Of a stretch of 64,000 bases of DNA, positions 1,370-27,200 are shown piece by piece. Both the position numbers and the translations under genes were made by a program. Each line of letters starts with the position of its first letter. Position 1 is the first letter of the stretch. Source of the DNA: Mizuhopecten yessoensis (Eukaryota). The notes beneath the pieces are model-generated. The model worked only from the letters and a program-made list of their open reading frames with translations, was not told the origin of the DNA and searched no databases. The stretch is taken from assembly GCF_002113885.1 (NCBI RefSeq), contig NW_018408727.1:214334-278333 (forward strand). The letters run 5' to 3'.

Positions 1370-2760
1370 AACTTACCTGGGAGATTTGAGGAAGTAACTG
1401 AGATTGATAACTTACCTGGGAGGAAGCTACAAAGATTGGTGACTAACCTTGGAGATTGGAGGAAGTCACAGAGATTGATGACTTACCTGGGAGGAAAGCT
1501 ACAGAGATTGATGACTTACCTGGGAGGAAGCTACAGAGATTGATGACTTACCTGGGAGGAAGCTACAGAGATTGGTGACTTACCTGGGAGGAAGCTACAG
1601 AGATTGATGACTTACCTGGGAGTAAGCCAAAGAGATTGGTGACTTACCTGGGAGGAAGCTACAGAGATGGATGACTTACCTGGGAGGAAGCTACAGAGAT
1701 TGATTACTTACCTGGGAGGAAATCTACAGAGATTGATGACTTACCTGGGAGGAAATCTACAGAGATTGATGACTTACCTGGGAGGAAGCGACAGAGATTG
1801 ATGACTTACCTGGGAGGAAGCCACAGAGATTGAAGACTTACCTGGGAGGAAGCTACAGAGATTGATGAATTACCTGGGAGGAAGCTACAGAGATTGATGA
1901 CTTACCTGGGAGAAAGCTACAGAGATTGGTGACTTACCTGGGAGGAAGCCAAAGAGATTGATGACTTACCTGGGAGGAAGCTACAGAGATTGATGAATTA
2001 CCTGGGAGGAAGCTACAGAGATTGATGACTGACCTGGGAGGAAGCCAAAGAGATTGATGACTTGCCTGGGAGGAAGCGACAGAGATTGATGACTTACCTG
2101 GGAGGAAGCCAAAGAGACTGATGACTTACCTGGGAGGAAGCTACAGAGAGTGATGACTTACCTGGGAGGAAGCCAAAGAGACTGATGACTTACCTGGGAG
2201 GAAGCTACAGAGAGTGATGACTTACCTGGGAGGAAGCCAAAGAGACTGATGACTTACCTGGGAGGAAGCTACAGAGAGTGATGACTTACCTGGGAGGAAG
2301 CTACAGAGATTGATGAATTACCTGGGAGGAAGCTACAGAGATTGATGAATTACCTGGGAGGAAGCTACAGAGATTGATGACTTGCCTGGGAGAAAGCTAC
2401 AGAGATTGGTGACTTACCTGGGAGGAAGCTACAGAGATGGATGACTTACCTGGGAGGAAGCTACAGAGATTGATTACTTACCTGGGAGGAAATCTACAGA
2501 GATTGATGACTTACCTGGGAGGAATCTACAGAGATTGATGACTTACCTGGGAGGAAGCGACAGAGATTGATGACTTACCTGGGAGGAAGCGACAGAGATT
2601 GATGACTTACCTGGGAGGAAGCGACAGAGATTGATGACTTACCTGGGAGGAAGCCAAAGAGACTGATGACTTACCTGGGAGGAAGCTACAGAGAGTGATG
2701 ACTTACCTGGGAGGAAGCCAAAGAGATTGGTGACTTACCTGGGAGAAAGCCACAGAAGTT
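1370..2760 (-). repeat. 32-bp minisatellite (about 43 copies) derived from the exon 12 donor junction
   Basis: Plus-strand unit GACTTACCTGGGAGGAAGCTACAGAGATTGAT; the terminal copy is the real exon end GACTTACCTGGGAGAAAGCCACAGAAGTTAAT. Confidence 0.95.
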
Positions 2761-2871
2761 AATATAAAAGACAATGTCTGTGTCGTAGGCAGCGTATAGT
2801 CGTTTGTTGTCCCCACATGTGGCCAGGTGTGAAGGAACATAATAAGATAGGTACTTCTGACCCCCATTGGA
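2739..2871 (-). CDS. ROCO exon 12 (COR)
   Basis: TTTCAG|TCC ... CCCAG|GTAAGT; YYVPSHL...FYINFCGFLP. Confidence 0.9.
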
Positions 2872-3121
2872 CTGAAACACAAAGGTTTACAATGTTAGTA
2901 ATCACAGTGTACAGATATGTAAAATCTCTACAGGTAGACATACTAACAAACTTAAGAATCTGTGAATGTCTCCAACACCTGATCAACAGTTACTGACAGT
3001 TTTATATCCTGCAGTTACTTTGGAAAAGTTATAAAGTATTTTCTTCTTTAAGGATCCCTGTTCCACTGCGCTGTAATTTTCCCTATATATACAATTATCT
3101 CCCCTTTAACTTCCTCTTGGA

Positions 3122-3260
3122 TGTAACTGTAGCACACAGTTGGACCAGGACACTTCTGTTGACCAGGTAGCTCGGTCGGTTAGAGCGATAGTATATAACA
3201 ATCTGAGGTCCAGGGTTGGAATCCCGGTCTAGCCCTGCTGAGTTTTTCACACTCTGAACA
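3122..3260 (+). mobile_element. tRNA-containing solo-LTR-like repeat (or degenerate tRNA-SINE)
   Basis: TGTAAC...GAACA ends, A-box TAGCTCGGTCGG, B-box GGTTGGAATCC; same layout as the LTRs at 32085-32513; no TSD seen. Confidence 0.5.
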
Positions 3261-23290: not shown

Positions 23291-23371
23291 CAACAGCAGA
23301 TTGTATGGTAACACAAAAAACAGCTTTTAAACATGCACACTTTGCATCGTCTGGGTCCCCAAGCTTAAGCT

Positions 23372-23470
23372 CACCAGCTTGTCAGACATACGCCAGCTTG
23401 TCAGACATACACCAGCTTGTCAGACATACACCAGCTTGTCAGACATACACCAGCTTGTCAGACATACACA
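23372..23470. repeat. 19-bp tandem repeat ACCAGCTTGTCAGACATAC, about 5 copies
   Basis: Direct reading. Confidence 0.9.
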
Positions 23471-24245
23471 CTTACCACCTCAGCACAAATGATTACCAAC
23501 AATGAACACACACTTACCACCGAGAAACACACACTTACCGTCTCAGCACACACTTACCACCTGGAAACACACACTTACCGTCTCAGTACACACTTACCAC
23601 CTGAGAACACACACTTACCACCCCAGAACACACACTTACCACCCCAGAACACACACTTACCATTTGAGCACACACAATTACCACCTGGGAACATACACTT
23701 ACCACCTCAGAACACACACTTACCACTTGAGCACACACAATTACCACCTGGGATCAGTGGCCAAGTGGTTAAGTTTTCTGACATTCTGCTACCACAAACC
23801 CTCCACCACTGGGTTGTGGGTTCGAGGCCTAAGTGGAGCAGTCGCCAGGTACTGGCTATAGGTTGGTGGGGGGTTTCCGGGAACTCTGGCTTTCCTCCAC
23901 CCCCAAAACACGTCCTTAAATGACCATAGCTGTTAATAGGACGTAAAACTCAAATAAACCTACCTGGCCATGGGATGCACACTTACCCCCTGGGAACAAA
24001 TACTTACCCCCTGGGAACACATACTTACCCCCTGGGAACACATACTTACCCCCTAGGAACACACACTTACCACATCAGCACACACACTTTCTACCGGGGT
24101 CACACACTTACAAACTGGGAACACACAAATTCCGTCTGAGCACACACACTTACCACCTGGGAACACACACTTACCACCTGGGAACACCCACTTACCAACA
24201 GGACCCATTCACTCATCAGTTGGACACAACATACTCACCAGCTTG
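23465..24245. repeat. 21-bp minisatellite ACACACTTACCACCTGGGAAC interrupted by a SINE
   Basis: Units on both sides of 23751-23960; minus strand reads CAGGTG GTAAGTGTG. Confidence 0.9.
23751..23960 (+). mobile_element. tRNA-derived SINE (V-domain-like) inserted in the minisatellite
   Basis: A-box TGGCCAAGTGG, B-box GGTTCGAGGCC, GGTTTCCGGGAACTCTGGCTTTCCTCCAC core, A-rich tail. Confidence 0.75.
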
Positions 24246-27200
24246 ACACCTGTGTACTTGCCAGTTGAGCAAACACAACAATAATAACTACTTATAGTCA
24301 ATAAATGAGATGTCCTTACCACCCCCGGTCATTATGTCGGGATTAGATATATCCGGTCGAAGCCACGTCCAGGATCCAAGAGCATGACCATTCCGCCTAC
24401 GATACTGTTAGTCAACTAGCCCACAACCAAGATATGTGACACTTTCCTCGGAATCTTCGTTAATATCAATATAATATGTAGGTGTCTCCGTCACCTAATG
24501 TATCAGTCTGGTGCCGGTGTCACCGTGCCTATTTAAATACTGTATCTACGGAACATCCATCACAACGGTATTGACGTATCTCCTTGAAATATATTTAGTG
24601 TGAAGTTGTCGAAATGAAACTCTTTTTATCAAAATCCTGCATCATCACATCAGCAGATTGGAGGGGCGTATATCATGCCCGCTGCAAGAGTGTGAATATC
24701 ATCCAAAAAGTCCAAACTTATCTTCAGCTTGTAGTGTATGATATCTAGCAGAATAGATGTCCAATGTTAATGTACATGTAAAACCAACCACAAATCTTCA
24801 TGATACTGACTACAGTTTCAGCTGTATGGACGACATGTCAGTTTGGGCTTCTCTACCCCAGTACCTCCCGGTACATATGCTGTCCTTATAGCTACCTGCA
24901 GTTCTGCCCTCCACTGCCAGGAGCACACCGTGCCATCAAGCTCTGTTACAGAAGTCCCAGCACAGTTGGTTGAAGCCTTCCAATGAGGCGCAGCATTAAA
25001 CATTTACTGGACCCATGGCCAGACATAATCAGATATACGTTCCATTTAACACGCAGATATAATATAACAGCACATACGGCTCTCAGGTAGGATAAAGCCA
25101 GGTATATATGCTACCTGAGACAGGTAAACGTGTATACACGTACAGGTGAATCGAAAGTTGTTGAATCAATCAGCAATCCTAGGCTCCTCCACTAAATCAA
25201 TCAATATTCTCCACAGATCTGCTATCCAGTAACGGTACCACACTCTCAATTCAATTGCCCTTTATTTGCATTCATTTATTCATGATTACATTCAATCAGT
25301 TAAATTATGCTGTAATTGTGTTTGTTTTCATCTAAAAAGTCAACCCTGAGTTGATTGCTATAGTGCTGCTGGTTGTATATACATACAGACAGATGAGCTT
25401 TATTAGGTTTCGGATAGGACACAAAGGTTCTGAGAATTCCCAGTACCTTTTGAGGACACATGTACTTCATGAAGTGCACATAATTTTGGGATGTCACTTT
25501 TCATGGCCCCAGTAGCTAGCCCGATTATCTGCTGAGACATCTGGTCACAATTAATGTGAATAAAAACAATTCAGATGCTTAATTGTCTTATTATATATAT
25601 TGTCTTGTATCATTAAATATAAAGTTTCTGTAATAAATTTTCAACAATTAAAATGAAATATCTTTGATCAATGTTAGTATTCCATCACTAATTATACACG
25701 TAGCAATATATACCCAGCACTGGTCACATATACATTAAGTCGGGCCCTAAAGACAATCAGACTCTGCGACGGATACTACGCCCTCGACTACCGTTAATCC
25801 CGGTAATGACACTATATATCAAACCAGGCCGAGGGCAAAATATAATGAAGTCCCGGTATATAAAGTAAAGCACTGGTCTCATCCTATAGAAACAACCATT
25901 TCTGGCATTATCTTATATATGTTTAGATATATTATTTTAGAAGACGTCGCAATTTCTAGACATCCGCATTGTGTGTACTTTGTTTATAACATCAGTATTT
26001 TTTATGCATTAAGTAATAAGTATGTGTACTCCATTTATGACGTCACAAATAAATTCAAATCGACTCAAAAGCCCCAAAATGGTCGAAAGCGCTTGTGAAT
26101 TGTAGTCTTTGCGTTTTGCTTTATATATATATTTTTACCATCACATGGACACTTAAAACTATTTATCGCTATATTATTTTAAATATATACATGGACAAGG
26201 AAGTAATCCCAACAGTGTAGACAATAGGAGGTCGTCAAACTTTCGGAGCAATCTTTGGATCTGGTCCTCTATAGAGACACAGAAACATAGAACAGCTTAC
26301 ATAACATTAAAACAAAATAGAAATATACATGTAATAGGATATAGCTTATATTTTAAAAACAATATGTCTCTCAACTAGCATATAAAACCGTAGGCAGAAT
26401 ATTGATTTACACTGATCATGACTGCATTGTTGGCAATTTACCGTTGATATTACTTTTTTTGACTCATACGTATACACGCACATCCATATACATATTGTAT
26501 AACAGTATGTAATATATTTGTACATGGATGCAGCTGGTTTACGCTCATACTGGCATGAATGTTAAATACCGATATGAGTCGTTAAACTGCAGGCCATCAC
26601 AAGGTCAAGCAGCACCATATAATTATTACTGATAGATCATACTGGAAAATTAATGCAAACCATTCTAAGTAATTACCATTCCACACGCGAAACACATGAC
26701 ATGTTAAATATTTAAATGATGTTCATGCACAACAAGACCGAGGAAACATTGCAAATCAAAAGAAAAAAATTGCTGCCTGTCAAGTTAACACAATCTACAG
26801 AAGATACCTTTGTAAATGATGGATCAATACAGAGTATTATGTATTGAACAGTCTGGGCACTGATCCTGAATACTAGATAATCGGAGCGTAATTGGAGGGT
26901 AATTATAGAGTACCGCCATTTTGATGAAATGAAAATTTTACGGCAGACCGTAATCCTGATCATGATAGTCCTAGAAGTTGTGTATTTATATATACATGCT
27001 TGCAGGTATTTTGATAAAAGAAAGTGTAAAGGAATCAATGTCATACTATTTTAAATCAAATGATTTATAAGCTGAAAAATGATAGAGTCACCAAGATACT
27101 GTTTGTTTTTGTAATTATACCCAAAATGGAGTTCGCTGAACCCCTCTTATTCATCTCAGCATGTCATTTGGGCTGGCTGACATCATTATAGACATAAGCA

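What the first reader, a model, noticed from the sequence alone, without database searches (positions are those of the whole stretch)
1370..24332. One gene whose introns are loaded with tandem arrays of its own splice junctions and sense-strand 5' splice sites
Seen: three separate ROCO exon boundaries have each seeded a minisatellite (exon 12 donor about 43 copies, exon 10 donor about 7, exon 7 acceptor about 7). Two further arrays in the 16-kb intron read ATG|GTGAGT and GTG|GTAAGT on the transcribed strand. Established: GTAAGT/GTGAGT pair with U1 snRNA, U1 suppresses premature polyadenylation, and tandem duplication of AG|GT-containing sequence is a proposed route to intron gain. Inference: repeat birth centred on junctions several times in one gene looks non-random. 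It could reflect a junction-focused mutational process, or a copy-number-tunable splicing/NMD rheostat on a ROCO gene. It may also be neutral: junction-containing duplications are tolerated because the outermost site still gives the correct mRNA.
Basis: partly seen in the sequence, partly recalled or inferred. Interest (0 to 1): 0.8.

Follow-up and report, generated by a model that had tools for sequence, protein, structure and literature searches.

The report
Splice-junction minisatellites in a ROCO gene
Three introns of an invertebrate ROCO (NHR-Roc-COR) gene hold tandem arrays that are real copies of the gene's own exon-intron junctions. This kind of repeat is already known ("mirage" minisatellites) and occurs at hundreds of other genes in this genome, so it is not special to this gene.

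Summary
The minus strand carries an NHR-Roc-COR gene of at least 13 exons. Three locally born minisatellites have units that contain one of its splice junctions:
- exon 12 donor: 32 bp, 43 donor-like sites
- exon 10 donor: 94 bp, 7 full copies plus 1 partial
- exon 7 acceptor: 37 bp, about 6 copies, degenerate next to the exon

Full-length homologs align without a gap across both donor junctions when the first donor is used. Any later donor shifts the frame or brings in a stop codon.

The two "sense 5' splice site" arrays in the 15.9-kb intron belong to one GT-rich family. Relatives of it lie elsewhere in the genome, so they are weak evidence.

The pattern is not ROCO-specific. Tandem exact CAGGTAAGT arrays occur at roughly 360 loci (three or more copies). 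In at least 10 of 17 loci sampled, the first copy closes a real exon (Mago nashi, reelin-like, PAN; FANCL at a further locus). Another gene also carries three junction arrays.

Per genomic copy, the excess over control 9-mers is only about threefold (p about 0.02).

This kind of repeat is known: amphioxus "mirages" and the human F7 IVS7 VNTR. Most likely these are slippage-born, tolerated repeats in an array-dense gene. Nothing supports a ROCO-specific rheostat. Earlier scan notes cover only this same window.

The parts
27593..28058 (-). Exon 1: start codon (ATG at 28058) and the Neuralized-homology (NHR) domain
   Evidence: Pfam Neuralized E 1.6e-39. Homologs align from their residue 1. Boundaries read.
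11717..27592 (-). Intron 1, 15.9 kb. It holds dispersed-family minisatellites but no junction-derived array.
   Evidence: Homolog residues 156 and 157 are contiguous across it. Its arrays are listed by TRF.
13839..16294 (-). 45-bp x 54 minisatellite in intron 1, with no donor motif
   Evidence: Related arrays lie on other contigs (C660, C1843, C5552).
21871..24199 (-). Composite of related GT-rich 19-21-bp arrays (GATG[A/G]TGAGTG and CAGGTGGTAAGTGTG). A SINE-like insertion of about 215 bp splits it at about 23760-23975.
   Evidence: Relatives at C4518, C79402, C4118 and C5460. No open exon lies upstream of it.
11554..11716 (-). Exon 2: Roc P-loop (GQDRVGKTS)
8656..8934 (-). Exon 5: Roc switch II (DFAGQ)
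   Evidence: Pfam Roc 27.8 bits, just above the curated cut-off of 27. Also.
8991..9348 (-). 66-bp x 5.4 minisatellite in intron 4. It ends 56 nt upstream of the exon 5 acceptor. It was born locally but is not derived from a junction.
   Evidence: Unique in the genome. No similarity to either flanking junction, p 0.3-0.75.
7300..7541 (-). 37-bp minisatellite derived from the exon 7 acceptor junction (intron end plus the first 9-10 nt of the exon). It decays into the true acceptor at 7249/7248.
   Evidence: 20/26 identity, 15-nt identical copy, p about 0.002. Unique in the genome.
7066..7248 (-). Exon 7
4934..5140 (-). Exon 10: COR-A domain (NPQWL). Its last 80 nt are the first copy of the 94-bp array.
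   Evidence: Pfam COR-A E 8.4e-12. Also.
4329..5013 (-). 94/91-bp minisatellite with 7 full copies and 1 partial copy. The unit is 76-79 nt of exon 10 plus AAG|GTATGT plus 9 more intron nt.
   Evidence: Unique in the genome.
3556..3726 (-). Exon 11: COR-A, continued
   Evidence: Contiguous with the end of exon 10 in homologs P0042 and P0027.
2739..2871 (-). Exon 12. It ends ...GGCTTTCTCCCAG, which encodes GFLP plus 1 nt.
   Evidence: Homologs align up to its last codon and continue directly in exon 13. Boundaries read.
1376..2756 (-). 32-bp minisatellite with 43 donor-like sites. The unit is about 18 nt of the exon 12 end plus GTAAGTCAYCAAT. Higher-order repeats are visible.
445..605 (-). Exon 13. 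The gene runs on beyond the left end of the window.

Best explanation
These are boundary-spanning ('mirage'-type) minisatellites.

**Origin (inferred).** In a gene whose DNA is unusually prone to minisatellite formation, short segments of 32-94 bp were duplicated in tandem. They were then amplified by replication slippage and unequal exchange. Three of these segments happened to include a splice junction.

**Why they persist.** The arrays sit entirely on the intron side of the authentic site. The first donor (for exons 10 and 12) or the last acceptor (for exon 7) still yields the ancestral mRNA. The extra copies are decoy splice sites whose use would produce frame-shifted or stop-containing transcripts.

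**Shown.** The anatomy of the arrays is shown, as is their local origin from the junctions. The first-donor product is colinear with homologs. The same anatomy is found in unrelated genes.

**Inferred.** The slippage mechanism, the near-neutrality of the arrays, and the claim that the spliceosome actually uses the outermost site in this species.
For: - **Unit composition.** The units hold both exonic and intronic sequence.
- **Exon parts are ancestral.** They are conserved coding sequence: the COR-A motif NPQWL in exon 10, and homologs align to the last codon of exon 12. So the direction is exon to array.
- **Local origin.** The three arrays are unique to this locus or, for exon 12, match only weakly elsewhere.
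- **Array behaviour.** Higher-order repeats and decayed edge copies are typical of unequal exchange.
- **Later donors are harmful.** Later exon 12 donors add 32 nt per step, and an in-frame TAG lies in unit 2. Later exon 10 donors add 94 or 91 nt.
- **Array density.** The gene span is 25% minisatellite, against 1.2% in the other 36 kb of the window. The flanks of 17 other donor-array loci are 24% minisatellite.
- **Other genes.** The same anatomy occurs at FANCL, Mago nashi, reelin-like and PAN exons. A SUN-like gene carries three junction arrays.
- **Published precedent.** Amphioxus mirages do not disturb splicing (PMC3087553, PMC3902484). In human F7 IVS7 the most upstream of identical tandem donors is chosen (PMC1557585).
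Against: - No RNA data are available for this species, so use of the outermost site is inferred.
- Three junction arrays among four locally born arrays is more than a uniform-seed null predicts: P 0.003-0.004 per base, 0.026 conditional on intron.
- Genome-wide, tandem consensus donors are about threefold over-represented per genomic copy. Pure chance plus tolerance may therefore not be the whole story.
- Copy numbers rest on one assembly.
Confidence: 0.7

Rival explanations
1. A junction-biased process operates across this genome. Tandem duplications either arise preferentially at exon-intron boundaries (for example where transcription, splicing and replication interact), or are preferentially retained when they carry U1-binding sites. 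The ROCO gene is one of many targets.
For: - Triple tandem CAGGTAAGT gives 2113 matches, against 85-400 for five control 9-mers. CAGGTGAGT gives 873 against 169 for its reverse.
- About 22% of all genomic CAGGTAAGT copies lie in tandem runs, against 3-6% for two controls.
- Distinct loci per genomic copy are about 3-fold (pairs) to 7-fold (triples) above controls, p about 0.02 each.
- Neighbouring arrays at the sampled loci carry donor-like motifs more often than their reversed sequences do: 6/48 against 1/68, p 0.02.
- Several junction arrays per gene recur at L016 and L007.
Against: - One control 9-mer (ACGTAGTGA) reaches the same match-based and run-based ratios because of a few giant arrays.
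- The locus-level counts are small (21 against 4).
- Junction arrays sit in neighbourhoods that are about 24% minisatellite and have short introns. There, overlap with a junction is likely by position alone.
- The junction lies anywhere within the unit: the exonic share is 3 to 34 nt of 21-50 nt. This argues against a breakpoint fixed at the junction.
- No orientation or acceptor-side test was possible without annotation.
Confidence: 0.2
2. The arrays are a functional, copy-number-tunable regulator of this ROCO gene. Decoy sites would divert a share of transcripts to nonsense-mediated decay. Alternatively, arrays of U1 sites or of recursive-splice-like sites would help process the intron.
For: - Every exon 12 unit reads pyrimidine tract-CAG|GTAAGT, and 35 of 43 donors are perfect.
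- Use of internal sites would create premature stops.
- The earlier scan note s1-507947 raises the same recursive-site resemblance.
Against: - The pyrimidine tract is simply the coding sequence for Phe-Leu-Pro of exon 12.
- Donor positions vary as much as the other columns: 3.7% against 3.8-6.0%.
- The same arrays occur in unrelated housekeeping and developmental genes.
- The intron is only 2.1 kb, so it does not need recursive splicing.
- No RNA evidence exists.
Confidence: 0.04
3. The arrays, or their copy numbers, are artefacts of a short-read draft assembly.
For: The assembly is fragmented: 82,659 contigs for 988 Mb. Arrays of 0.7-2.5 kb are hard to assemble. An amphioxus mirage was reported as misassembled in a draft genome (PMC3087553).
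Against: - Units differ from one another in a structured, higher-order pattern.
- One array carries a SINE-like insertion.
- Array edges decay into unique sequence.
- No N run lies in the region.
- Hundreds of independent loci show the same anatomy.
Confidence: 0.04

Closest known systems
'Mirage' minisatellites of amphioxus (Adh3, troponin C, globins BflGb6/BflGb9, PGBD5)
   Same: Tandem repeats whose unit spans an exon-intron boundary, on either the donor or the acceptor side. Units range from tens to about 150 bp. Many copies keep AG/GT signals. The authentic copy sits at the exon end of the array. Mirages are reported as length-unstable and harmless to normal splicing (PMC3087553 and PMC3902484).
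   Different: This is a different phylum-level lineage: an unidentified invertebrate, not a cephalochordate as far as the tools can show. Copy numbers are much higher here (43, and up to about 200 at other loci). I obtained a rough genome-wide count. Splicing and instability are untested here.
Human F7 intron 7 37-bp VNTR (Borensztajn et al. 2006, PMC1557585)
   Same: The first element of a minisatellite spans the exon-donor boundary, so the authentic 5' splice site is followed by identical pseudo-sites. Experiments there show that the most upstream site is chosen by 5'-to-3' scanning. That is the behaviour assumed here.
   Different: It is a single mammalian locus with few copies. Here there are three junction arrays in one gene and hundreds in the genome. 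Site choice is untested in this species.
Recursive splice sites (ratchet points) of long introns
   Same: The exon 12 unit carries the motif pyrimidine tract-CAG|GTAAGT.
   Different: The motif here is a by-product of copying coding sequence plus the donor. The intron is 2.1 kb, not tens of kb. No conservation or RNA evidence exists. I do not file the array under this family.
Intron gain by tandem duplication of an AGGT-containing segment (Rogers model, as discussed in PMC3087553)
   Same: Tandem duplication creates extra AG|GT pairs that could become new splice sites.
   Different: No new intron or exon is seen here. Homologs show the ancestral exon structure. The exonic parts of the copies are out of frame: 79, 76 or 32 nt steps.

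Membership tests
Mirage-type (exon-intron boundary) minisatellite | The repeat unit contains both exonic and intronic sequence, with the splice junction inside it | tested here: met
   Exon 12 donor, exon 10 donor, and exon 7 acceptor (p about 0.002). Exon boundaries were fixed by homolog tblastn and by reading the junctions.
Mirage-type (exon-intron boundary) minisatellite | The authentic junction is the outermost copy, and the other copies lie inside the intron | tested here: met
   Homologs are contiguous across E10/E11 and E12/E13 with the first donor. The acceptor array lies upstream of the true exon 7 acceptor.
Mirage-type (exon-intron boundary) minisatellite | The array arose locally from the gene's own junction and is not a dispersed repeat family | tested here: met
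   The exon 10 and exon 7 arrays are unique in the genome. The exon 12 array matches only other, unrelated donor arrays at 70-73% identity. By contrast, the intron 1 arrays fail this feature.
Mirage-type (exon-intron boundary) minisatellite | Normal splicing is not disturbed, and the array is length-polymorphic or unstable | not testable with these tools
   No RNA data, reads or second haplotype are on hand. No alternative haplotig was found.
ROCO protein family | A Roc GTPase domain directly followed by a COR domain | tested here: met
   Searched exon by exon against Pfam. Roc scores 27.8 bits (cut-off 27) in exon 5, with a P-loop in exon 2. COR-A scores E 8.4e-12 in exon 10 and continues in exon 11. 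Full-length homologs of 1000-1300 aa are colinear. The joined protein was not built or searched.
Recursive splice site | A pyrimidine tract-AG|GTAAGT motif in a very long intron, conserved, and used as a zero-length exon | tested here: not met
   The motif is present. However, the intron is 2.1 kb and the motif is copied coding sequence. Usage and conservation cannot be tested.

The most novel reading that the evidence does not exclude
This genome has a junction-biased tandem-duplication or retention process. It puts decoy arrays behind something like 1 in 50 consensus donors. That would give hundreds to thousands of natural 'identical tandem 5' splice site' experiments, and a possible standing source of new introns and exons.
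Probability: 0.2. Interest if true: 0.7.

Novelty: new member of a known kind. Interest (0 to 1): 0.42.

Why it matters
For this gene alone, little: the arrays are most likely tolerated junk that leaves the ROCO mRNA intact.

The wider point is more useful. Boundary-spanning minisatellites have so far been described gene by gene in amphioxus and at human F7. Here they appear at several hundred loci in an unrelated invertebrate genome, often several per gene.

With RNA-seq from this species, one could test at scale how a spliceosome chooses among identical tandem splice sites (scanning versus proximity). One could also measure how much decoy use feeds nonsense-mediated decay, and whether such arrays seed new exons or introns.

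There is also a practical warning for gene prediction in this genome. Arrays of perfect donors sit directly behind real exons.

Tried and rejected
- **Exon 5 acceptor.** I first took the 66-bp array at 8991-9348 for the 'acceptor' array. It ends 56 nt from the exon 5 acceptor and shows no similarity to either junction. It is not junction-derived.
- **Intron 1 arrays as independent sense-strand donor arrays.** Rejected. They are one related GT-rich family with relatives on other contigs. The 45-bp array has no donor motif and also has relatives elsewhere.
- **Paralog comparison.** Exon 12 has no paralog in the genome at E 0.01 or better, so array presence could not be compared among paralogs.
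- **Raw match counts as an enrichment measure.** Rejected as too noisy. They are dominated by a few giant arrays, and one control (ACGTAGTGA) equals the test motif on that measure. I used distinct loci per genomic copy instead.
- **Acceptor-side genome-wide test.** Not attempted. Acceptor 9-mers are too T-rich and too weakly specific to have any power.
- **Species identification.** A paper search on the assembly statistics and the protein atlas gave nothing. From memory the statistics resemble a scallop draft assembly, but this is unverified.
- **Original mirage paper (PMC117041).** Not held in the library. It is cited only through PMC3087553.
- **Selection on pseudo-donors.** Column variability shows no clear constraint.
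- **Joined spliced protein.** Exons were searched one by one by reference.
- **Human sequence.** Nothing here looks human.

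
Full report
**What is there**

TRF finds many minisatellites between 1.4 and 24.3 kb of the window. The gene lies on the minus strand. Stop-free stretches searched one by one against Pfam give three domains:
- Neuralized/NHR at 27.6-28.1 kb, E 1.6e-39
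- Roc in the exons at 11.6 and 8.8 kb, 27.8 bits against a cut-off of 27
- COR-A at 5.0 and 3.6 kb, E 8.4e-12

A search of the 1.84-billion representative library with exon 10 alone returned full-length relatives of 1000-1300 residues. Aligning nine of them to the window with tblastn gives a colinear 13-exon model. I checked every boundary by eye, and the reading phases close:

| Exon | Coordinates |
|---|---|
| E1 | 27593-28058 (start codon at 28058) |
| E2 | 11554-11716 |
| E3 | 10001-10164 |
| E4 | 9676-9830 |
| E5 | 8656-8934 |
| E6 | 7831-7911 |
| E7 | 7066-7248 |
| E8 | 6765-6875 |
| E9 | 5671-5814 |
| E10 | 4934-5140 |
| E11 | 3556-3726 |
| E12 | 2739-2871 |
| E13 | 445-605 |

The gene continues off the left edge of the window. 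Homolog residues 156 and 157 are contiguous across one 15.9-kb intron.

**The three junction arrays**

*Exon 12 donor.* The exon ends ...TTCTGTGGCTTTCTCCCAG|GTAAGTCACCAATCT. The array repeats about 18 nt of exon end plus GTAAGTCAYCAAT. It has 43 donor-like sites, 35 of them exact GTAAGT. 36 of the units are exactly 32 nt. There is clear higher-order repetition, and the distal copies are decayed.

*Exon 10 donor.* The array starts 80 nt before the exon end. It has 7 full copies of 94 or 91 bp and one partial copy. Each copy is 76-79 nt of COR-A coding sequence plus AAG|GTATGTAGCTCACAG.

*Exon 7 acceptor.* The 37-bp unit ...TATATAAACTGTTGCAG|GGGAACCCC matches the true junction ...TATACATATTTTTACAG|GAGAACCCC at 20 of 26 positions. 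One copy is identical over 15 nt. p is about 0.002 against shuffles and against 433 other window segments. About 50 nt of decayed copy link the array to the real acceptor.

The exon 10 and exon 7 arrays are unique in the genome. The exonic parts are conserved coding sequence, and homologs align to the last codon of exon 12. The arrays were therefore copied from the junctions, not the other way round.

**Consequences for the mRNA**

Homologs run without a gap from exon 10 into exon 11 (P0042 684/684, P0027 676/676). They do the same from exon 12 into exon 13 (P0042 782/783, P0049 727/728). This holds when the first donor of each array is used.

Each later exon 12 donor adds 32 nt, and an in-frame TAG lies in the second unit. 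Each later exon 10 donor adds 94 or 91 nt. Internal sites would therefore give transcripts with premature stops. Whether they are used cannot be told without RNA data.

**The other arrays**

- The 66-bp array in intron 4 is local but unrelated to either junction.
- The 21-bp and 19-bp arrays at 21.9-24.2 kb do read ATGGTGAGT (16 times) and GGTAAGT (19 times), on the sense strand only.
- They are one related GT-rich family, split by a SINE-like insertion and with no exon upstream.
- Similar arrays lie on other contigs.
- The 45-bp array has no donor motif and also has relatives elsewhere.

**Is it more than chance in this gene?**

I collapsed each array to one unit and placed seeds uniformly per base. 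Seeds wholly inside an exon were forbidden. The expected number of junction-spanning arrays is then 0.33-0.37, and P(3 or more) is 0.003-0.004.

If each seed is placed uniformly only within the intron that holds it, the expectation is 0.84 and P is 0.026.

Both are nominal values for a window chosen because it looked odd. The gene span is 25% minisatellite, against 1.2% for the other 36 kb of the window.

**It is not specific to this gene**

A BLAST of the exon 12 array against the whole genome (988 Mb, 82,659 contigs) hit other arrays of the same anatomy:
- A FANCL exon (Pfam FANCL_C, E 2e-14) ends ...CTCTATGAG|GTAAGTCACC. It is followed by 13 copies of a 27-bp unit made of 17 exon nt plus the donor.
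- At another locus, two consecutive exons each carry a donor array (31 bp x 45 and 41 bp x 25).

The pattern CAGGTAAGT-N(12-42)-CAGGTAAGT-N(12-42)-CAGGTAAGT matches 2113 times in the genome. The first 100 matches are 17 distinct loci, which extrapolates to roughly 360 loci.

I fetched those 17 loci. In at least 10, the first donor of the array closes an open frame with an upstream acceptor. They include:
- a Mago nashi exon (Pfam E 7e-11)
- a PAN-domain exon
- a reelin-like EGF exon

Two of the 17 (L030 and L031) are the same array and flank, 100 kb apart on one contig, so there are 16 independent sequences.

The junction sits anywhere in the unit: the exonic share is 3 to 34 nt of 21-50 nt. 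One of these loci (L016, a SUN-like gene) has an array in almost every intron. Three of those arrays span junctions: donor 50 bp x 19, acceptor 37 bp x 37, and donor 33 bp x 4. CAGGTGAGT arrays give the same picture, with 873 matches against 169 for the reversed motif.

**How strong is the genome-wide excess?**

| 9-mer | Genomic copies | Pair matches | Triple matches |
|---|---|---|---|
| CAGGTAAGT (test) | 19,714 | 3272 | 2113 |
| TGAATGGAC | 5,470 | 248 | 183 |
| AGTGATGCA | 7,769 | 168 | 85 |
| ACGTAGTGA | 3,792 | 602 | 400 |
| TGAGCAGTA | not counted | not counted | 357 |
| ATGACGAGT | not counted | not counted | 190 |

- Raw triple-match counts exceed the five controls 5- to 25-fold.
- CAGGTAAGT is also 2.5-5 times commoner in the genome than the three controls that were counted.
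- Match counts are dominated by a few giant arrays. ACGTAGTGA equals the test motif on match-based and run-based ratios for that reason.
- Counting distinct loci in the same part of the genome (contigs up to C428) gives 21 loci, against 3 and 1 for two controls. That is 3.1-fold per genomic copy, binomial p 0.02.
- With triples, the figures are 17 loci against 1, which is 6.7-fold, p 0.02.
- About 22% of all CAGGTAAGT copies lie in tandem runs, against 3-6% for two controls.

There is thus a modest excess of about threefold. It could reflect a real junction bias. It could also just reflect that minisatellites in this genome cluster in certain genes with short introns. The flanks of the 17 loci are 24% minisatellite.

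**Comparison with what is known**

The kind is known. Tandem repeats spanning exon-intron boundaries were named 'mirages' in amphioxus Adh3. They were later reported in troponin C, globin and PGBD5 genes, on both donor and acceptor sides. They are length-unstable and leave normal splicing unaffected. They have been proposed as raw material for intron gain (PMC3087553, PMC3902484).

Human F7 intron 7 carries a 37-bp VNTR whose first unit spans the donor. Experiments there showed that the most upstream of the identical sites is chosen by 5'-to-3' scanning (PMC1557585).

I found no report of this in molluscs or other protostomes in the library searched. That is a limited search.

The resemblance of the exon 12 unit to a recursive splice site is real as a motif (also noted in scan entry s1-507947). 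It is explained by the copied Phe-Leu-Pro codons plus the donor, and the intron is only 2.1 kb. I do not file it there.

**Verdict**

The best explanation (confidence 0.7) is tolerated boundary-spanning minisatellites, born by slippage or unequal exchange in an array-dense gene. The outermost splice site preserves the mRNA.

- A genome-wide junction bias remains possible (0.2).
- A ROCO-specific rheostat (0.04) and an assembly artefact (0.04) are unlikely.
- The finding is a new member of a known kind.
- Its main value is as a pointer to a genome with hundreds of natural tandem-splice-site arrays.
- The species could not be identified with the tools. Nothing suggests human sequence.

Noticed in passing
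L016 (G000:C121:57000-66000), arrays at 2549-3688, 4185-5126, 5589-6669, 6974-8340, 8507-8642: In a SUN-like gene, almost every intron is dominated by one minisatellite. Three of these arrays span junctions. One exon has an acceptor array (37 bp x 37) on its 5' side and a donor array (33 bp x 4) on its 3' side.
   Followed up: partly
L007/L008 (G000:C4844:1020322-1024019): Two consecutive exons each head a donor-junction array (31 bp x 45 and 41 bp x 25). A 70-bp x 3 repeat with GGTCAGTAAGTCAC lies just upstream.
   Followed up: partly
L019 (G000:C234:11000-19500): A Mago nashi exon (an exon-junction-complex protein) is itself followed by 24 copies of a 49-bp unit containing its own donor.
   Followed up: partly
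L030 and L031 (G000:C532:112500-121500 and 215000-223500): The same 33-bp donor-motif array, with identical upstream flank, occurs twice 100 kb apart on one contig. The flank is not exon-like. It is either a segmental duplication or a mobile element carrying the array.
   Followed up: no
window 23760-23975: A SINE-like insertion of about 215 bp interrupts the 21-bp GT-rich array in intron 1. This shows that the array is old.
   Followed up: no
window 800-989: A near-perfect hairpin in intron 12, with 76-nt arms 92% complementary and 38 nt apart. It looks like a MITE.
   Followed up: no
window 3140-3265: A tRNA-like or SINE-like stretch in intron 11 (gggctagaccgggattccaaccctggacc...). ARAGORN calls no tRNA there.
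   Followed up: partly
window 28443-28546: A 9/27-bp repeat (CCTTGAGGA) about 400 nt upstream of the ROCO start codon, on the gene's 5' side.
   Followed up: no
G000:C690:2355164-2357811: A near-perfect 29-bp array of 90 or more copies (ACGTAGTGACTGAATACATAGTAAATGGT). It was seen while running a control motif.
   Followed up: no
window 436-28058 versus 28059-64000: Minisatellite cover drops from 25% inside the ROCO gene to 1.2% in the adjacent 36 kb. Array density in this genome is strongly regional.
   Followed up: partly
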